Shown here one piece after another: positions 21,487-64,000 of a DNA stretch of 64,000 bases. The position numbers were made by a program, and so were the translations under genes. The notes beneath the pieces were generated by a model, which saw only the letters and a program-made list of their open reading frames with translations, had not been told where the DNA came from and searched no databases. Position 1 is the stretch's first letter. Each line of letters starts with the position of its first letter. The DNA lies in the NCBI RefSeq assembly GCF_016433145.1, contig NC_058131.1:551797608-551861607 (forward strand), read 5' to 3'. This stretch comes from Gracilinanus agilis. Its lineage: Eukaryota.

Positions 21487-21711
21487 CTGGGGCACAGTAG
21501 ATCCAAAAGGTAGAGGCACTGGTCACTCTAGTCACAGGGGACAGAACAGGCACCTGACAGAAAATAGGGGCAATCACAAATCTCTTCCCTGTACCTGGCC
21601 TTCTGCTCAAGGTCTGATTACTTTGCCCCATTCCCAAGTTACCCCTTTCAACACTATGTTTGTGACTCACTGAGAGGTTGAAGGGGGTATCCAGAGTCGC
21701 TGGCTTTAGGG

Positions 21712-29393
<7,682 letters not shown>

Positions 29394-32399: not shown

Positions 32400-32611
32400 N
32401 NNNNNNNNNNNNNNNNNNNNNNNNNNNNNNNNNNNNNNNNNNNNNNNNNNNNNNNNNNNNNNNNNNNNNNNNNNNNNNNNNNNNNNNNNNNNNNNNNNNN
32501 NNNNNNNNNNNNNNNNNNNNNNNNNNNNNNNNNNNNNNNNNNNNNNNNNNNNNNNNNNNNNNNNNNNNNNNNNNNNNNNNNNNNNNNNNNNNNNNNNNNN
32601 NNNNNNNNNNN
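32400..32611. other. Assembly gap (212 N) between CARMIL3 and CPNE6
   Basis: N run adjacent to a SINE end. Confidence 1.
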
Positions 32612-56600: not shown

Positions 56601-59600
56601 TGATTATTAACTGAATGCCTTATAGTCTTAAAGTCATCTGGGGCACTGAGAGATTAACTGACTTATTCTCAATCACATGTCTCAGAATCAAACCTTGATC
56701 TTAGGTCTTCTTGAATCTAAGGATGGCTCTATCTATTCTGATATGCTGCCTTTCACAAAGTAGGTTCTATTGTTATTATGATTCTAATTTTTTAGATAAA
56801 GAAATTGAGGCTTGTATGAAGGTAAATTATTTGCCTAGCAACTCACAGGAAATACACATCAGTCAGGAAGCTAGCTTAAGTCTCTCCTCATTCTTTTCCA
56901 TTACATCAATAGAATGTAAACTCCCTGAAGGCCGATACTCTTTGATTTTTGTCTTTTTATTCCTAGCATTAAACATAGTGTGGTGGAGTTGATAGAGTGA
57001 TGGCCTGGGAGTCAGGAAGACATCTCTTCCTGAGGTCATATCTAGCCTCAGACTCTAGCTGTGTGACCCTGGGAAAATTACTTAATCCTGTTGGCCTCAG
57101 TTTCCTCCTCTGTCAAATGAACTGGAGAAAGAAATGGAAAACGACTCCACTTTCTTTGCCAAGAAAACTTCAAATTGGGTAAAGAAGAATCAAACACGAC
57201 TGAAAAAAAGACTGAACAATAGCGTAGCATCATGTAGGCCCTTAACAAATATTTGTTGAGTCATAGAAGAAGCTGCTTGTTATAAGAAAATTATTCTGTA
57301 ACGTGCTCCATAATAATGAGCTACAATTATAAACTGCCGACCCCTCAAGGGCAGTGAGTGATGGAGCCTCCTCATCTTTGGGCCCTGCATGTAGGGCATT
57401 TCAGCAGTTGTACTGCTGCCAGGGATGGGCTGGGATGGCTAAGATCAGGGACAAAGCTGGATTTAGGGTCAGTGTCTCTTTGGATGGGGGAAGGGAAAGG
57501 GCATCTCATGCTCACCACAGACACTGTGGGTGGTGGACGTGGAGGTCTCAGAGTTGGGGGATGTGTCCCGGGGCCCCTCAGGGGTCTCAGGGTTTCCACG
57601 CCGGATCAGGCACCTGGGAAAATGATGTGCACAGCCCAGAAGGGGGTTGAGAGAGTTTCCTTTAATTCCTTCCAAACCCCAGCTTTAGAATCCCAAATAG
57701 ACATCAGGTAGGAAAGATGTCTCCCATTCCCACTTTTCCCTGTGATCCAAATCCCTCCGCTTTGTCCTGAGAGCATGGGAGCCTTCTTGGAGTTGTGACT
57801 CACCCAGGGCCTGGGCAGACCTTGGCTAGCGCTGTGCTCACATGCCGGGTCACCTGCTCCACGCTCTCTGCTGATGGTAATCTCATGCTCACCGTACCAC
57901 GCTCTGTCTCCACCAGGATCTGGGGAGAGAGACACGGTGGCAGGTGCTCAAACTCAGCTCCCACCTCAGGGCACCCTGCTTTGCACTTCAGGATCTCCGG
58001 GATCAAATAGAAACTCCTCTGTTGGATTTTAAAGCCCTTCACAACCTGGCCAGTTCTTCTTTTTACACCTTACTTCCCTCTACATACTATACAAATGCGA
58101 TGCTCCATCTCCTGGCTCCTTTTCACTGACTGTCCCCCATGGGTATAATGCTCTCCCTTCTCCCAAGTGTCTTTCAAGGCTCAGGTCAAATTCTACTTTC
58201 TGTAAGATGATTCTCTCAGGCTCTCCCACTGACAGCACCTTCCCTCTGGGATGACACACTATGCTGTGCAAATACATTTTATGTGGCAAATACAAGGTGG
58301 CTGGCATGTTGTCTTCCCCCATTAGATTGGGGGTCTTCAAGGCTGGGCACTGTGTTTTTGCTTTTCTTTGTATTCTTAGAGTTTAGCACAGTGCCTTGTA
58401 CATTGTAAGTGCTTAGAAAATGTCTACTGCCTATTTGAATACTAAAGGTAACAAAAAAACCCCTTATGCTTCCACAGTCCCAGTGAATTTAATTCCCTGC
58501 TCTTACCTGGTTCTGGTTGAGGGTGCTAAAGGTTCGGATCTCTAGGACATTGAAAGAGCTCTCCACCTGGGATGGGGGGAAGGATGGATGCAGCTCAGTT
58601 CAGGTCAAAGATATGGGCTGGTATAGAAGGAGAGCTTTGGGATATGGCCCTATTCTGCTCAGCTCTTCCAACTCACCTTAGCTGGGACTTTTAGAGGGAA
58701 GAGATGAAGTCTCCAGGCAGTCAGAGCCTAGAAAGGAGAGAAGAGAGGGTTAGTTTGTTGAAGGAAGCTACCCCTACAATCCTCCCTGAGTTTCTGGTCT
58801 CCCTCAATTCTCATGAGCTCCAGCTCCCCATTTCCTTTATTATCATTGTCATTATTTGAACTAGTCTTTTTCCTTTCATCTTCTAAACTAATCTTTTTCT
58901 TCTGATCTTTGTCTATGGAGTTCAGGTAGAAACACTCCTGGGCAAGTTGATATGATATTGCTTTTATTTTATATTTAGTATTCTGTGGGCTACTGCACAA
59001 ATGGATACAAGAGCTGCTTTTTGTAACTGAGTAAAAGTCTGGGATATAGGTTTATTGTCTACTGTAGACTTACAGAAATTCTAGGACAATTCTGGTAGCA
59101 GAGAGGAAGGTGGAGATTCTTGTTATTATTAAATGTAAGTTTAGTCTTTTTGCCCTCAGTCCTGTCCCTGATCCTTCCTCACCCACCCTGGACCCTGTGC
59201 AGCCAGCCTTGCCCTCTCACCAGCACTCGGTCTTCATACTTCTTGGGCTTGGTCTCCAGTTTCACCCGATGCTGTTGGTGCACAGCTCCTCGACTCAGGC
59301 ACCTCCGGATGCTTTCTGTAGGAAAGAGATGGGGTGTGAGTGCTGCTTGGAGTGGCACATGTCCCCCTCCGTTGGGCTCTCAGAAAAAATGAAGCAAAGA
59401 CAAAGGCAGCAGGTGAGAGGGAAAGACAGAAAGAAGAACTGAGACAGGAAACTCCAGAGACAGAGGAGGGCAAAGAACTGGCTCCTTCCCTGAGTAACTC
59501 TTTTCTTTGGTGTCATCAGGAAAGGCCTGAATCTCCCAGCAAACTTAGGCAACTGGAGATCCTTGAGGGGTTCATATATGTGTGCTTGTGTGTATGTGTG

Positions 59601-60971
59601 TGTGAGAGAGAGAAAGAGTGAGACTATGTCACTGTGTGTGGGTGTGTGTGTGTCTGTGCACTTCTGAGGGTGTGAAGCTTTTTCCAACCCGTGTTAAACA
59701 GTATTCATGGCATACAACAATGAGTCAATGTTACTCTGTGTGTATGAGGGGGTAGTGTGTCCCTAGGACTGGTTTGGTATGAGGATACAGCCACTGCTTC
59801 ACATTTGTGTTAGCACCAGTGCATGTTAACTGAAGGTGTCAGTGTGACTGCTTGACAGTGGGTGGTGGGTATGAGTATGTGCTAGGGAAATATTATGGAG
59901 AGATACAAAAAAAGGAAATCAGTTTGGGTTACTCCATAGAGAAAGCTACAGAGTAAGGCAGTGCCCGTGTGAGTGCACATTCAAGTCCCATGCCTTTCAG
60001 CTCTGTGTGCGTGTGTAGGTGGGAGAGCGTGTGTATGTGTACGGTGGGTCTCTATGTCTTCCGGTTTGGGTTAGCCTTCAGTGTTTTGCCAGAGGTATAC
60101 ATGACCCTGGTTGGATCTCCCAGTACTTGTCCTATCCTTGGGCCGGTGATCCAGAGGGTTGAGGGATGGGACGGAAGAGTGCTCTTCACTTTGGGGGCAA
60201 TCTGGGAAATCATACTCACAAGGAAGGGCTTCATGTGGGGGAAGGGCAGTGGACAGGAAATTGGTGGTGGGCACTGTGGTCGCTGAGGAAGTAGAATTTA
60301 ATTCTAGAACCGTGTCTCTTTTCTGCTTTCTCGTCTACGACCCTCTCCGCCCCGGCATTGCCCCCTCCCACACCGATCCCAGGGGCTCTACTGGAGCCCG
60401 GGTGGGGCAGAGCGAAGGATGTAGAGGTAGACGCAGCGGTCAGCACCAGGGGCAGCTCCCTCTATCTGCCCGGGCGGACCCGGCCCGGGGCGGCTGAGAA
60501 GGGGGAATTTTAAAGCTAGAAAACCCCAGGGATGGACCGAGGGACTGGTCAACGACCAGAGCTCTGGATGGGCCCAATAGGGGAACGCAAGGAGCTGCAC
60601 CTGTCACGGAGGGGAGGGGCGGGGCTGGGCGGCCCGGGGATAAGGAGGTACAGACTGGGGTGAAACACCGGTCGGTCGGTCGGGGAGGAGGGAAGATGGG
60701 AGGCAGGGAGGAGAGGATGCACTGGAAACAGCGATGCACTGGGGTTGCAATGCATGGAGGAGCGGAATGCATGGAGCAGCGGGTTGCACCAGAACTGGGA
60801 TGCATGGAAGAGAGGGATGCACGCGGGATGGGATGTACCCGGGGCAGGGATGTACTGGGGAGAGAAATGCACCGGGACGGGGATGCTCCAGGACGGGGCT
60901 TTTCCTGAGCCCGCAGCGCCCGCCCTCGTACCTTGCAGCTCGCGGGTGAGCTCCGCGCTGGGCTTGGCCAT
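34162..60971 (-). CDS. CARMIL3: Capping protein regulator and myosin 1 linker 3 (LRRC16B): PH-like, LRR, helical dimerisation, CPI/CSI and Pro-rich tail; 40 coding exons, 1375 aa (1370 with the upstream exon 39 donor)
   Basis: [13 protein letters not shown] start, LRR exons, CPI motif [21 protein letters not shown] motif [10 protein letters not shown], end TSELGTD*; all 40 exons GT-AG with continuous phase, total 4128 nt. Confidence 0.96.
34335..34460 (-). CDS. CARMIL3: CARMIL3 exon 39 (alternative donor would end it at 34350)
   Basis: [36 protein letters not shown](GSGGE). Confidence 0.85.
34727..34889 (-). CDS. CARMIL3: CARMIL3 exon 38
   Basis: [21 protein letters not shown]...DQEEPETQ. 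Confidence 0.88.
34984..35102 (-). CDS. CARMIL3: CARMIL3 exon 37
   Basis: [23 protein letters not shown]...IPARSTK. Confidence 0.9.
36890..37390 (-). mobile_element. Two SINE1-type SINEs separated by AT-rich low-complexity DNA
   Basis: Family pattern at about 36890-37048 and 37190-37390. Confidence 0.75.
38000..38250 (+). mobile_element. MAR1-type CORE SINE
   Basis: CORE plus gagaaggaaatagcaa...aaatggggtc tail. Confidence 0.8.
38765..38958 (-). mobile_element. SINE1-type SINE
   Basis: Family pattern with poly-T end. Confidence 0.8.
39059..39148 (-). CDS. CARMIL3: CARMIL3 exon 36
   Basis: [29 protein letters not shown]. Confidence 0.95.
   Translation of the reverse strand, partial: GPGPGSPLHLPRAPSRVSAPCVELKLRGT
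39244..39310 (-). CDS. CARMIL3: CARMIL3 exon 35
   Basis: [22 protein letters not shown]. Confidence 0.9.
39445..39573 (-). CDS. CARMIL3: CARMIL3 exon 34
   Basis: [10 protein letters not shown]...[23 protein letters not shown]. Confidence 0.92.
39680..39835. repeat. CT-rich low-complexity tract
   Basis: Direct reading. Confidence 0.85.
39980..40301 (-). CDS. CARMIL3: CARMIL3 exon 33 (basic membrane-binding and Pro-rich region)
   Basis: [11 protein letters not shown]...[17 protein letters not shown]...PSFRRKQ. Confidence 0.95.
41220..41395 (-). mobile_element. SINE1-type SINE
   Basis: Family pattern. Confidence 0.75.
41448..41484. repeat. (TG)n(TATG)n microsatellite
   Basis: Direct reading. 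Confidence 0.9.
41678..41778 (-). CDS. CARMIL3: CARMIL3 exon 32 (CSI motif)
   Basis: [33 protein letters not shown]. Confidence 0.93.
42409..42617 (-). CDS. CARMIL3: CARMIL3 exon 31 (CPI motif)
   Basis: [12 protein letters not shown]...[25 protein letters not shown]. Confidence 0.95.
42815..42878 (-). CDS. CARMIL3: CARMIL3 exon 30
   Basis: [21 protein letters not shown]. Confidence 0.95.
43185..43328 (-). CDS. CARMIL3: CARMIL3 exon 29
   Basis: [14 protein letters not shown]...[15 protein letters not shown]. Confidence 0.95.
43592..43679 (-). CDS. CARMIL3: CARMIL3 exon 28
   Basis: [29 protein letters not shown]. Confidence 0.95.
44054..44229 (-). CDS. CARMIL3: CARMIL3 exon 27
   Basis: [26 protein letters not shown]...DIQNKL. 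Confidence 0.95.
44385..45135. repeat. GA-rich polypurine tract with three ~65-bp internal units (44492-44695)
   Basis: Almost pure A/G on + strand; repeated gagggaaggaga..aaagagatgaatagagggagagacacagggaaaga. Confidence 0.95.
45615..45728 (-). CDS. CARMIL3: CARMIL3 exon 26
   Basis: [38 protein letters not shown]. Confidence 0.95.
46059..46187 (-). CDS. CARMIL3: CARMIL3 exon 25
   Basis: [23 protein letters not shown]...AKNSRA. Confidence 0.95.
46489..46587 (-). CDS. CARMIL3: CARMIL3 exon 24
   Basis: [33 protein letters not shown]. Confidence 0.95.
46708..46801 (-). CDS. CARMIL3: CARMIL3 exon 23
   Basis: [31 protein letters not shown]. Confidence 0.95.
46962..47030 (-). CDS. CARMIL3: CARMIL3 exon 22
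   Basis: [22 protein letters not shown]. Confidence 0.95.
47221..47595 (+). mobile_element. Head-to-tail pair of 5'-truncated SINE1-type SINEs
   Basis: Two ~190-bp units, each preceded by aaaaggttctgt(c/t)ata. Confidence 0.85.
47721..47893 (-). CDS. CARMIL3: CARMIL3 exon 21
   Basis: [26 protein letters not shown]...LQINSSL. Confidence 0.95.
47991..48045 (-). CDS. CARMIL3: CARMIL3 exon 20
   Basis: [18 protein letters not shown]. Confidence 0.95.
48435..48531 (-). CDS. CARMIL3: CARMIL3 exon 19
   Basis: [31 protein letters not shown]. Confidence 0.95.
48680..48761 (-). CDS. CARMIL3: CARMIL3 exon 18
   Basis: [27 protein letters not shown]. Confidence 0.95.
49551..49620 (-). CDS. CARMIL3: CARMIL3 exon 17
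   Basis: [23 protein letters not shown]. Confidence 0.95.
49704..49808 (-). CDS. CARMIL3: CARMIL3 exon 16
   Basis: [34 protein letters not shown]. Confidence 0.95.
50122..50198 (-). CDS. CARMIL3: CARMIL3 exon 15
   Basis: [25 protein letters not shown]. Confidence 0.95.
50851..50928 (-). CDS. CARMIL3: CARMIL3 exon 14
   Basis: [26 protein letters not shown]. Confidence 0.95.
51487..51596 (-). CDS. CARMIL3: CARMIL3 exon 13
   Basis: [36 protein letters not shown]. Confidence 0.95.
51893..51979 (-). CDS. CARMIL3: CARMIL3 exon 12
   Basis: [28 protein letters not shown]. Confidence 0.95.
52183..52277 (-). CDS. CARMIL3: CARMIL3 exon 11
   Basis: [31 protein letters not shown]. Confidence 0.95.
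52615..52845 (+). mobile_element. MAR1-type CORE SINE
   Basis: Full family pattern. Confidence 0.8.
53191..53279 (-). CDS. CARMIL3: CARMIL3 exon 10
   Basis: [29 protein letters not shown]. Confidence 0.95.
53366..53441 (-). CDS. CARMIL3: CARMIL3 exon 9
   Basis: [25 protein letters not shown]. Confidence 0.95.
53695..53768 (-). CDS. CARMIL3: CARMIL3 exon 8
   Basis: [24 protein letters not shown]. Confidence 0.95.
53917..53987 (-). CDS. CARMIL3: CARMIL3 exon 7
   Basis: [23 protein letters not shown]. Confidence 0.95.
54240..54465 (+). mobile_element. MAR1-type CORE SINE variant
   Basis: Head plus gaaaaccctatggac...catggggtca tail. Confidence 0.7.
54650..55180. mobile_element. RTE-family-derived repeat (RTE/RTESINE-like)
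   Basis: ttgaagaggaccaatga...ctcttccagagtcatcaaagtccagtg...ccaagctctaag...gagcagccctgaaaagg pattern of marsupial RTE repeats. Confidence 0.6.
55550..56400 (+). mobile_element. L2 fragment
   Basis: ctgcaaatctggcttctggcctcatcattcaacc...ccaaatccagtg...; L2 tail acagtgcttggcaca. Confidence 0.75.
56420..56592 (-). mobile_element. SINE1-type SINE
   Basis: Family pattern. Confidence 0.75.
56985..57220 (+). mobile_element. MAR1-type CORE SINE
   Basis: Family pattern. Confidence 0.75.
57516..57613 (-). CDS. CARMIL3: CARMIL3 exon 6
   Basis: [32 protein letters not shown]. Confidence 0.95.
57804..57919 (-). CDS. CARMIL3: CARMIL3 exon 5
   Basis: [20 protein letters not shown]...KVCPGP. Confidence 0.95.
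57990..58430 (+). mobile_element. L2 3' fragment
   Basis: ttttaaagcccttcacaacctggcc...ttagcacagtgcctt tail. Confidence 0.7.
58507..58566 (-). CDS. CARMIL3: CARMIL3 exon 4
   Basis: [20 protein letters not shown]. Confidence 0.93.
58677..58727 (-). CDS. CARMIL3: CARMIL3 exon 3
   Basis: [17 protein letters not shown]. Confidence 0.93.
59221..59315 (-). CDS. CARMIL3: CARMIL3 exon 2
   Basis: [31 protein letters not shown]. Confidence 0.95.
60439..60459 (+). promoter_or_regulatory. RE1/NRSE (REST-binding) element in CARMIL3 intron 1
   Basis: TCAGCACCAGGGGCAGCTCC vs consensus TCAGCACCACGGACAGCGCC, 17/20. Confidence 0.7.
60715..60890. repeat. Degenerate minisatellite (GATGCA/GATGTA core, about 15-20 bp period) in CARMIL3 intron 1
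   Basis: About ten spaced (g/a)atgca/gatgta cores. Confidence 0.7.
60932..60971 (-). CDS. CARMIL3: CARMIL3 exon 1 (coding part)
   Basis: gccgccATGG Kozak; [13 protein letters not shown]; donor GTACGA. Confidence 0.95.
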
Positions 60972-61045
60972 GGCGGCTGCTGCTGCTGCAGAGGAGCCGC
61001 CGCTGCCGCTGCCGCTGCCGCCGCCGCCGCCGCCGCCGCCGCTGC
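60972..61045 (-). repeat. Compound (GGC)n/(GGCAGC)n/(GCA)n repeat in CARMIL3 5' UTR
   Basis: Directly visible triplet runs immediately upstream of the start codon. Confidence 0.95.
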
Positions 61046-64000
61046 CCGGGAGCCGCGGCACATGCTAGACTCGGCTCCGGCAGGGCCCCGGCAGCTAGCG
61101 CTGCAGCAGCCGCTGAGCCTCGCTCACAGTCAGGGGCGGCTGCGCGAGCAGAACAGTCCTCCTCCCTCCTCCTCCCTCCTCCCCCGACGGTGCCGGGTCT
61201 CCCTCCCAGCCCCACGAGGAGCCGGACTGAGCATGCGCACAGAGTCTTTGCGAGCGAGCGGCCGGTCCAGGCGCGTGCCTAGCTTCCGCGGGGCTCTTTA
61301 ATACAATGCCCAGAGGCCGTGGTGCTTGGGGTCGGCTGCAGACCTCGGACCTTGCACCGCCTACCGTCTGCCGCTGGCCGCCAGTCCCAACCCACTTCTT
61401 CTGGGTTGCAAGCTCAACACTCTTTCTTTTGTTCTCTGGGCCTGGACGGTCTCTATTTCTTCCCAGGTCATTCTTCCTGTACCCCTCCCCCCAGACTGAC
61501 GCCACGGGTGGGCCACCCCTCTAACTCACCCTATGGTGACCCACGTGGGGCCTTAGGGCTGAGCCAAGCTCAGGTTTCGGTATGAACTTGTAAAGCTCAC
61601 AGCTCTCAACGCTGCGGAGTGGGGAGTGGATGTGTTGGAAGGGATTTCTTCTTCCCTTTTTCTCTTTTAGACTGATCCGACAGACACATCCCCACCAGTG
61701 TGTGCCTGCTAAGAGTAGCGCCCCGGGAAATTCCCGTGGCACCTTCGTCTTCCCTGGCTCTCGGCTTGGCACTATCACCGCTTTAGCATCTCACTTGCTG
61801 AGAGGGCCCCCTCCCCCCAGAAAGAAGGTGTAACTTACTGCCATAGGGAGGATCTCTGCTTGCCCGGGGGGGAGGGGACGAAAGCTATCCTTTCTTTTAT
61901 TCCCCAAATGACGAATCAACCAGCTAAAAAACCAACAAGATCATTTGCATGTTATTTGCAAGTTAATTTTATTTCTAATGACACAGAAACTGGAGATCTG
62001 CCCTGGGCCTTTCCCTTCTCGTCCCTACAGTGCTTCTGACTCCTTTCTCTTCCTTGGCCCGGTCCTGGTTTCAGACCTCACCCCTCTTCCCTCCAGCTGG
62101 GCTAAGTTTTGTAAAAAGTAGATTTGTCGATTAAGGCTAGAAAAATGAGTATTTCACATAAAAGCTTTTATACAGGACAGACATCCTTAAGGATGGCTTT
62201 TTCCCCCCATGCTTGGCAAATAGAGATCCCTAGTTGCCTCTCTACACACAGGCTAATTTTTATTTATTTTTTAATCCATGGAAGTCATTGGGTTGGTCAG
62301 AATAAGAGGAGGAGAGTCTTTGAACACAAATTCCAGGTGCAATCTTGAGTCCTCTCTTCATTCTAAATAGCTTCCTGCTTCTAAGGGGGTTCTCCAGGCT
62401 GATCAAAGCCGAGAAGGAGAACCTCCAGCCACTACTATTGTTTCTCCTGTGATGTAGTCGGCATCCGGTGAACACAGGAAGGACACGATGCCTGCACAGT
62501 CATGTGGCTCACCCAGCCTGGGGAACAATCATGAACATAATTATGATAAGAGTAATTACAATTCATATATTAGCACCTTATGTAATCCTCGGAGGGAATA
62601 GGAGAAATGGAGCATACAACCAAGGGGGCTTTGACTCAACTATTTCTGGTCAACTGTCCAAAGCAAATAGCATTTGTTTATGAACAGGTAGCAAATATGC
62701 TTCTAGATACCAGCCCACCTTGTTCCCTCCCCTAAACTATCTGAAAGGGTTCAGAAAATAAATGGCTTTAGGGAATACTATTCAACTATACTACTGAAGA
62801 CAATATGATATATGCAGATTTCCAATTTGGAAGATCTAGGTTCAGAACCAATGTGATACTTATTAGTTACAGGATATTGGCCATGCCATAATCTCTATAT
62901 GTTTTGAGCAACTCCCTAGGATTTATATACTAAATTATATGGACAGGATGACCATCTTCTTTGGTGCAGAGAGGCCTCATACCAGGAATATTCCTATATT
63001 GATGAAATCATATATTTTTCATGTGCCTATGTAATAATAATAATAATAATAGCAATAATAATTCTGTTAGAGTGGATTCTTCATCCTGGTGACCCTGAAT
63101 TTTTCTTTTCTTTTCTTTTTTTTTAACCCTTACTTTCTGTCCTAGTAAAAACTCTAAGACAGAAGGGCTAGGGCTAAGCAAATGGGGTTAAGTGAGTTGC
63201 CCAGGGCCATATAGCTAGGAAGTGCAGGAGTTTCTTAAAAGGAATACAAACTCCAGGAGGTCTTACCAAGCTGGAATAAGATTCAAGTACAGACTAGGTG
63301 ACAGACGGTGCATCTGTCCTCTGAGAATGAGCCTAGCTAAATTCAGGCTCCTCAGCAGATTGGCCTAAAAGTGATGAATATTTTGGTCACAGTGACGCTC
63401 AAAGACCACCTACTATGTCACAGAGAAATTGTAATAGGCAATACTGGAGGGTGAACTGACACTGATGAAATCATAAGCTATTGAAGAATTATAGGAGTAA
63501 TATGGTAAAATTATTTTGATTGTGTTCAGACCTGTTCTGTGAGTTTATTGATGTATACAAGTTGTAAGTGAGGAAATCCTCTCTCCCACTACAGACTAGC
63601 AAACACCCTGTAACTTAAAGTTTTTGAGAGTGGCTTAAGGATTCAAGAGGTCAAATTTCATGCTCAGAAGCATAAGTGAATATGGGGTAAAGGTGGGACT
63701 TAAACCCATGTTTTCTGACATTTTACTATTCTACTACACTGCCTTACTGCCAGAAAATGATGATGATGCTTTAAGAAAACTCAATATGAAAAAACTTAAA
63801 AGTTAAATGACCTATAAATTAGGAGAGTGGTGGTAATTATTTGTAATCCAAAAGCCTCCTTCTCTTCATTATAAGGTTATACTGAGTTTTCTTCAAGTAG
63901 TAGAATTCCCCTATATGCTCAAAATATGTTTTGATTTGATTCAATTTAGTTTATAAGCAACTTTTTTTTTTCTTCAGAAATTTACTTACGTGGCTCAATG

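What the first reader, a model, noticed from the sequence alone, without database searches (positions are those of the whole stretch)
59295..61063. Upstream overlapping ORF translating the CARMIL3 GGC repeat as poly-alanine
Seen: an AUG at 61063-61061 (agcATGt, A at -3), 92 nt upstream of and out of frame with the main AUG. It reads through the 5' UTR repeat and, after the exon 1-2 splice, ends at TGA in exon 2. The peptide is 50 aa: MCRGSR-A17[27 protein letters not shown]. Known: overlapping uORFs repress main-ORF translation, and GGC repeats in 5' UTR uORFs (FMR1, NOTCH2NLC) produce toxic homopolymer peptides when expanded. Inference: repeat-length-tunable translational control of a neuronal gene, or an unannotated micropeptide. 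This is the most novel-looking element in the window.
Basis: partly seen in the sequence, partly recalled or inferred. Interest (0 to 1): 0.7.

Follow-up and report, generated by a model that had tools for sequence, protein, structure and literature searches.

The report
Poly-alanine upstream ORF in marsupial CARMIL3
The upstream start codon and the 50-codon reading frame that turns the CARMIL3 leader repeat into 17 alanines are really in the DNA, but such frames arise by chance in a fifth to a third of similar GC-rich leaders, and nothing here shows that this one is transcribed, translated or conserved, so it is best read as an ordinary, possibly mildly repressive, upstream ORF.

Summary
The uAUG is at 61063-61061 (A at -3, U at +4), 92 nt upstream of and out of frame with the main AUG at 60971. 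After 15 nt comes a run of 17 GCN codons (61045-60995). The donor follows 60932, exon 2 is 59315-59221, and the stop is TGA at 59297-59295, giving 50 codons.

The gene is CARMIL3 of a marsupial, nearest the opossum and not identical to it.

The interpretation has no support. In dinucleotide shuffles of the leader, 21-33% carry an out-of-frame uORF overlapping the main AUG. The fold is no stronger than in shuffles. The wobble-only repeat variants are also CpG hot-spot changes. No paper links CARMIL3 to a uORF or a GGC repeat.

The decisive tests could not be run. The tool that fetches orthologous loci was closed.

Best reading: an incidental member of a known kind (repeat-bearing overlapping uORFs, as in NOTCH2NLC and FMR1). 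If it lies in the mRNA, it diverts some scanning ribosomes past the main AUG.

Interest is low, about 0.2.

The parts
60300..61400 (.). CpG island over the CARMIL3 promoter, exon 1 and the start of intron 1. It peaks at 60900-61200 (GC 0.77-0.78, CpG o/e 0.9).
61297..61303 (-). TATA-like heptamer (TATTAAA). If used, it would place a start site near 61276, upstream of both uAUGs. An initiator-like TCAGTCC begins at 61230.
   Evidence: motif scan; the start site is inferred, not shown
61130..61234 (-). Upstream uORF 1: ATG at 61234 in weak context (C at -3, C at +4), 34 codons, stop ending at 61130, 66 nt before the second uAUG. It is in the mRNA only if transcription starts upstream of 61234.
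61061..61063 (-). uAUG of the finding: A at -3, U at +4 ('adequate' Kozak context). A main-frame GTG at 61061-61059 shares one base with it.
60995..61045 (-). GCN x17 tract, read as Ala17 in the uORF frame, as Gly/Ser in the main frame and as Arg/Gln in the third frame.
60932..61063 (-). Exon 1 part of the uORF (44 codons). It overlaps the first 40 nt of the CARMIL3 coding sequence from the main AUG at 60971.
60969..60971 (-). Main CARMIL3 AUG in optimal Kozak context (purine at -3, G at +4).
   Evidence: protein match
59316..60931 (-). Intron 1 (GT...AG).
59221..59315 (-). Exon 2 (95 nt). tblastn gives 97% identity to opossum CARMIL3 residues 14-46.
59295..59297 (-). uORF stop codon TGA, 18 nt into exon 2 and 74 nt before the exon 2/3 junction. 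It is formed across the Leu-Ser codons of the main frame.

Best explanation
This is the GC-rich, repeat-bearing 5' leader of marsupial CARMIL3. A GGC-type microsatellite sits in a CpG-island first exon, as is common in vertebrates. By chance, an AUG lies 15 nt upstream of it in the alanine frame. If transcription starts upstream of 61063 (inferred), some scanning 43S complexes start at this AUG, whose context is adequate but not strong. They translate the 50 codons and pass over the main AUG while elongating, so they cannot make CARMIL3. They terminate 18 nt into exon 2, 74 nt before the next exon junction, a position that can also trigger nonsense-mediated decay. The remaining ribosomes leak past and use the main AUG, which has an optimal context. 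The net effect would be a modest, constitutive brake on CARMIL3 output. The poly-Ala peptide would be a short-lived by-product. Neither the repeat length nor the peptide would have a dedicated role. Shown: the sequence anatomy. Inferred: the start site, the initiation, the repression and the decay.
For: The anatomy is exact. The gene is CARMIL3 and the exon 1-2 splice fits opossum CARMIL3. The uAUG lies about 340 nt inside the upstream edge of the CpG island, and a TATA-like element and an initiator-like motif lie upstream of it. Chance yields such an overlapping uORF in 21-33% of shuffled leaders, and the ATG count is not unusual: 1-2 observed against 0.5-1.0 expected. The leader fold (-97.7 kcal/mol over 153 nt) is no stronger than in shuffles, z = -1.2. 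All five non-GCG units differ at the wobble place of the Ala frame. Four of them are G-to-A changes in CpGs, a mutational hot spot, and three sit in a repeated GCAGCG unit, so they are few events and need no selection (inference). Established knowledge holds that most mammalian genes carry uORFs, that uORFs are usually repressive, and that their peptides are small and unstable (PMC8918734; PMC10027321).
Against: There is no transcript, ribosome or conservation data at all, so 'incidental' is a default, not a demonstration. uAUGs are on the whole selected against in vertebrate leaders, so one retained in adequate context just before a structured repeat could be functional. The layout closely resembles two cases with shown function: uN2C, with an ATG 15 nt before the repeat, and the FMR1 overlapping repeat uORF. 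All 17 codons stay alanine despite five variant units.
Confidence: 0.5

Rival explanations
1. The uAUG is not part of the major CARMIL3 mRNA. Transcription starts downstream of 61063, within or just before the repeat, so the uORF exists only as DNA and does nothing.
For: No read evidence could be obtained. CpG-island promoters start transcription over broad zones, and the island's peak (60900-61200) includes the repeat itself. The TATA-like and initiator-like motifs are simple consensus matches.
Against: The uAUG is only 92 nt from the main AUG, shorter than a typical vertebrate leader (own knowledge). The island extends about 340 nt further upstream, with candidate core-promoter motifs at 61303 and 61230.
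Confidence: 0.25
2. It is a selected regulatory uORF. Either it acts like FMR1, as a repeat-bearing overlapping uORF that sets CARMIL3 synthesis and lets it respond to neuronal signalling. Or it acts like ATF4, where uORF 1 (61234-61130) allows reinitiation and the overlapping uORF 2 captures ribosomes except under eIF2-alpha phosphorylation. In both cases repeat length would modulate spacing or structure.
For: Two uORFs lie in series, the second overlapping the main start out of frame. The uAUG abuts a stable repeat structure of -47.8 kcal/mol over the next 86 nt. There is a precedent for native regulation by the FMR1 repeat uORF (PMC10027321). CARMIL3 acts at developing synapses (PMC6344529).
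Against: The feature is expected by chance in 21-33% of leaders. uORF 1 has 34 codons and a weak context, unlike the 3-codon ATF4 uORF 1 (own knowledge). The predicted structure starts 3 nt after the AUG, not at the roughly 14-nt spacing that aids start recognition (Kozak 1990 as cited in PMC8918734). No literature exists. Conservation is untested.
Confidence: 0.12
3. The relevant product is an N-terminally extended CARMIL3, not the poly-Ala uORF. Initiation at the main-frame GTG (61061-61059) would read the repeat as a Gly/Ser-rich extension, in the manner of near-cognate FMRpolyG initiation.
For: The main frame is open from TAG 61067-61065 down to the main AUG, and one GTG lies in it, sharing a base with the uAUG. 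Near-cognate initiation before GGC repeats is documented for FMR1 (PMC8918734).
Against: The GTG has a poor context (C at -3, C at +4) and competes with an AUG two bases upstream. None of the annotated CARMIL3 proteins printed carries such an extension.
Confidence: 0.04
4. The 50-residue poly-Ala peptide is itself a functional micropeptide.
For: There is only the precedent that the unexpanded uN2C peptide was reported to bind Ku70/80 (PMC8918734).
Against: Two thirds of the sequence is either a homopolymer or dictated by the overlapping CARMIL3 codons. A search with the neighbouring part of the same frame found no relatives (a blank is weak evidence). Such peptides are usually unstable.
Confidence: 0.03

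Closest known systems
uN2C, the ATG-started uORF holding the GGC repeat in the NOTCH2NLC 5' UTR (PMC8918734; PMC8186563)
   Same: A canonical ATG lies 15 nt upstream of a GGC-type repeat in the 5' leader. The product is small at normal repeat length (56 aa there, 50 here). The repeat sits inside an ORF rather than in untranslated RNA.
   Different: There the repeat is read as glycine, here as alanine. Here the uORF overlaps the main start and crosses a splice junction. There translation, the peptide and disease-causing expansion are shown, here nothing is shown. The gene and lineage differ (marsupial CARMIL3).
FMR1 CGG-repeat uORF (FMRpolyG, with the minor FMRpolyA frame) (PMC5263258; PMC10027321)
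   Same: A repeat-bearing uORF overlaps the main ORF out of frame and lowers its translation. The gene is neuronal. An alanine-frame product exists there too (FMRpolyA).
   Different: FMR1 initiation is at near-cognate codons or within the repeat, here at an AUG. FMRpolyA is a minor product. The regulation of FMRP synthesis was shown by experiment, and none exists here.
Ordinary out-of-frame overlapping uORFs of vertebrate mRNAs
   Same: An AUG lies upstream of the main AUG, out of frame, with its stop downstream of the main AUG. The expected effect is repression by diverting scanning ribosomes, possibly with NMD.
   Different: Nothing essential differs. The only special trait is that the frame runs through a triplet repeat.
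ATF4-type two-uORF delayed reinitiation (own knowledge)
   Same: There is a first uORF, then a second that overlaps the main start out of frame.
   Different: The first uORF has 34 codons in weak context rather than 3 codons in good context. It is in the mRNA only if transcription starts upstream of 61234. There is no evidence of stress control.

Membership tests
AUG-started overlapping uORF (oORF) | An AUG upstream of, and out of frame with, the main AUG, with no in-frame stop before the main AUG and a stop downstream of it | tested here: met
   offset 92 nt, 50 codons, stop 60 nt past the A of the main AUG in the spliced model.
AUG-started overlapping uORF (oORF) | The uAUG lies within the mature mRNA (transcription start upstream of it) | not testable with these tools
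Only motif-level hints exist.
AUG-started overlapping uORF (oORF) | Ribosomes initiate at the uAUG and main-ORF output rises when it is removed | not testable with these tools
   This needs Ribo-seq or reporters.
Repeat-embedded uORFs of the polyG-disease type (uN2C, FMRpolyG) | A GGC/CGG repeat in the 5' leader inside an ORF opened upstream of it | tested here: met
   17 units, ATG 15 nt upstream. This holds at the DNA level only.
Repeat-embedded uORFs of the polyG-disease type (uN2C, FMRpolyG) | The repeat is read as glycine | tested here: not met
   the uORF frame reads alanine. The glycine frame is the main frame and has no upstream AUG, only one GTG in poor context.
Repeat-embedded uORFs of the polyG-disease type (uN2C, FMRpolyG) | Repeat length is polymorphic or expandable, with an effect on the product | not testable with these tools
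   No reads could be laid.
ATF4-type delayed reinitiation | A very short, efficiently translated first uORF, then an inhibitory second uORF overlapping the main start | tested here: inconclusive
   the second feature is present. The first uORF has 34 codons in weak context, and whether it lies in the mRNA is unknown.
CARMIL3 orthologue (host gene) | Exon-by-exon protein identity and synteny with CPNE6 | tested here: met
   most exons are 96-100% identical to opossum CARMIL3 and about 78-80% to placentals. CPNE6 exons lie downstream on the same strand.

The most novel reading that the evidence does not exclude
The uAUG, its alanine frame and the repeat are conserved in marsupials (or more widely) and form a native, FMR1-like translational rheostat for a synaptic actin regulator. 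The repeat-bearing overlapping uORF, perhaps together with the upstream 34-codon uORF, would set CARMIL3 synthesis and make it responsive to neuronal signalling or to repeat length. It would be the first AUG-started poly-alanine example of this kind.
Probability: 0.08. Interest if true: 0.55.

Novelty: new member of a known kind. Interest (0 to 1): 0.2.

Why it matters
If the uORF were shown to be used and conserved, it would add a poly-alanine, AUG-started case to the small set of repeat-bearing uORFs with a native regulatory role (FMR1, NOTCH2NLC). It would also point to translational control of a synaptic actin regulator. As things stand it is a correct but unremarkable annotation detail. 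It mainly serves as a reminder that long out-of-frame ORFs through GC-rich repeat leaders are expected by chance.

Tried and rejected

2. Orthologous DNA. No other collection holds vertebrate genomes. No human contig or protein was fetched or compared.

3. ORF calls of relatives. A search with the intron-encoded part of the uORF frame found nothing. That blank says little.

4. Literature on CARMIL3 or LRRC16B with uORF, GGC or CGG gave nothing relevant.

5. Special RNA structure is rejected. The leader folds strongly, but no more than shuffles (z = -1.2), and the structure begins 3 nt after the AUG, not at about 14 nt.

6. Wobble-only repeat variants as a sign of selection for alanine are rejected as weak. 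They are CpG G-to-A changes and partly one duplicated 6-nt unit.

7. Rfam on the promoter side, both strands, gave no match.

8. Plus-strand ORFs across the repeat are open in all frames, as expected for GC-rich DNA, and there is no evidence for a gene.

9. The N runs at 23480-23642 and 32400-32611 were left untouched.
Full report
**What is there**

On the minus strand the window holds the first exons of CARMIL3.

- The sequence and a script confirm each coordinate in the finding.
  - The upstream ATG is at 61063-61061, with A at -3 and T at +4.
  - The main ATG is at 60971-60969 in an optimal context, 92 nt downstream and therefore out of frame.
  - Exon 1 ends at 60932 before a GT.
  - Exon 2 runs 59315-59221, after a pyrimidine tract and AG.
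  - The upstream frame stops at TGA 59297-59295.
- The upstream frame has 50 codons: six residues, 17 alanines (61045-60995; 13 GCG, 3 GCA, 1 GCT), then 27 residues. Most of these 27 are dictated by the overlapping CARMIL3 codons.
- TRF sees the same array as 17.0 copies of a 3-nt unit.
  - A second upstream ATG at 61234, in weak context, opens a 34-codon uORF that ends at 61130.
  - The main frame is open upstream to TAG 61067-61065 and reads the repeat as a Gly/Ser run. A single GTG in poor context lies at 61061-61059.

**Which gene and which organism**

- A distant exon (44340-44053) was searched against protein representatives. The hit was then used to collect named orthologues.
- Local tblastn of these proteins against window 33000-59400 shows most exons 96-100% identical to *Monodelphis domestica* CARMIL3. 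*Sarcophilus* is slightly lower and placentals are about 78-80%.
- The first 45 residues of the spliced model equal the opossum protein, which supports the exon 1-2 join.
- The window is therefore from a marsupial close to, but not identical with, the opossum.
- CPNE6 follows on the same strand, as I recall for mammals.
- CARMIL3 is a capping-protein regulator acting at developing synapses (PMC6344529), so calling it a neuronal gene is fair.

**Is it more than chance?**

No.

- I ran dinucleotide-preserving shuffles of the leader for three assumed start sites. Between 52% and 76% of shuffles carry at least one ATG, and 21-33% carry an out-of-frame uORF that overlaps the main ATG.
- GC-rich sequence is poor in stop codons, so long open frames are expected. 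All three frames on both strands are open across the repeat.
- Given an ATG before a GGC-type repeat, the alanine frame has a one-in-three chance.
- The leader folds very stably (-97.7 kcal/mol over 153 nt), but no more than shuffles do (z = -1.2).
- Downstream of the uAUG the predicted structure begins 3 nt after the A. That is not the roughly 14-nt spacing known to help start recognition.
- All five variant units of the repeat differ at the wobble place of the alanine frame, which at first sight suggests selection for alanine. However, four are G-to-A changes in CpGs, a mutational hot spot, and three lie in a reiterated GCAGCG unit. They therefore represent few events and carry little weight (inference).

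**Where does transcription start?**

This decides whether the uORF exists in RNA, and I could not measure it.

- The look-up of sequencing runs listed probable RNA holders.
- Sequence gives only hints.
  - The CpG island runs from about 60300 to 61400, so the uAUG lies about 340 nt inside its upstream edge.
  - A TATA-like heptamer sits at 61303-61297.
  - An initiator-like motif begins at 61230.
- I put the chance that the uAUG is in the major mRNA at about three in four. This is an inference.

**Conservation**

- As a substitute I searched the intron-encoded part of the uORF frame (60937-60443) for ORF calls on related genomes. Nothing was found, and that blank means little.
- No human contig or protein was fetched or compared.
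- The spliced uORF was translated only locally and was never sent to a search tool.
- The N runs were left untouched.

**How it most likely works**

- If the uAUG is in the mRNA, its 'adequate' context should capture part of the scanning ribosomes.
- Because the uORF runs over the main AUG, those ribosomes cannot make CARMIL3.
- They stop 18 nt into exon 2, 74 nt before the next exon junction. By the usual 50-55-nt rule, that geometry can also trigger nonsense-mediated decay.
- The remaining ribosomes leak through to the optimally placed main AUG.
- The expected outcome is a modest, constitutive brake, with a short-lived poly-Ala peptide as a by-product.
- This follows from established knowledge of uORFs (PMC8918734; PMC10027321). 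It was not shown here.
- Adding or removing whole repeat units keeps the frame, so 'repeat-length tuning' would need an effect of spacing or structure, for which nothing speaks.

**Comparison with what is known**

- The nearest described layouts are two.
  - uN2C of NOTCH2NLC has a canonical ATG 15 nt before the GGC repeat and a 56-aa unstable product at normal length.
  - The FMR1 repeat uORF overlaps the main ORF and lowers its synthesis, and it is needed for the mGluR response.
- The window shares the 15-nt spacing, the small size and the overlap.
- It differs in reading alanine rather than glycine, in crossing a splice junction, and in lacking any experimental support.
- It fails the 'read as glycine' criterion of the polyG family.
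- At the DNA level it meets the plain definition of an overlapping uORF.
- The two-uORF series recalls ATF4, but the first uORF is long and weak.
- No paper links CARMIL3 or LRRC16B with a uORF or a GGC/CGG repeat.
- The scan's own notes show at least six other overlapping uORFs flagged in this genome. One follow-up (CBX5) found its uAUG to be marsupial-only. These are unchecked leads, but they fit such features being common.

**Verdict**

- The interpretation can be neither supported nor refuted with the tools that were open, and all indirect evidence points to an ordinary feature.
- It is a new member of a known kind at best.
- Interest is 0.2.
- The most novel reading left open is a conserved, FMR1-like poly-alanine rheostat for CARMIL3 synthesis. 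I give it about 8%.

Noticed in passing
window 61130-61234 (-): A second upstream ATG (61234, weak context) opens a 34-codon uORF that ends 66 nt before the uAUG of the finding. With the overlapping uORF it forms a two-uORF series, but only if transcription starts upstream of 61234.
   Followed up: partly
window 60972-61067 (-): The main CARMIL3 frame is open upstream to TAG 61067-61065 and reads the repeat as a Gly/Ser run followed by six Ala. The only near-cognate start in it is GTG 61061-61059, which shares one base with the uAUG.
   Followed up: partly
window 60700-60900 (-), intron 1: A degenerate tandem array of about 16-nt units built around a GTGCATCC-like core. TRF reports 60813-60898, period 16, 5.2 copies, 68% matches, and by eye it continues to about 60700.
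   Followed up: no
window 61157-61183 (-): A purine-rich GGAGGAGGGA-type repeat (TRF period 10, 2.6 copies, 100% matches) in the promoter or leader. It could form a G-rich structure or bind GC/GA-box factors.
   Followed up: no
window 61317-61326 (-): A ten-base match to the left half of the neuron-restrictive silencer element (RE1/NRSE) consensus as I recall it, just upstream of the TATA-like heptamer. The right half does not match. This is a recollection, not a test.
   Followed up: no
window 59316-59342 (-): An AG at 59344-59343 could serve as an alternative acceptor and lengthen exon 2 by 27 nt in frame. Some predicted placental isoforms (P0082, P0083) carry a short insertion at this same junction. 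The uORF would keep its stop.
   Followed up: no
window about 21700-29393 (-): CPNE6 (copine 6) exons follow CARMIL3 on the same strand. The two N runs (23480-23642 and 32400-32611) were left as they are.
   Followed up: no
This suggests the pattern is reported often and is not rare.
   Followed up: no
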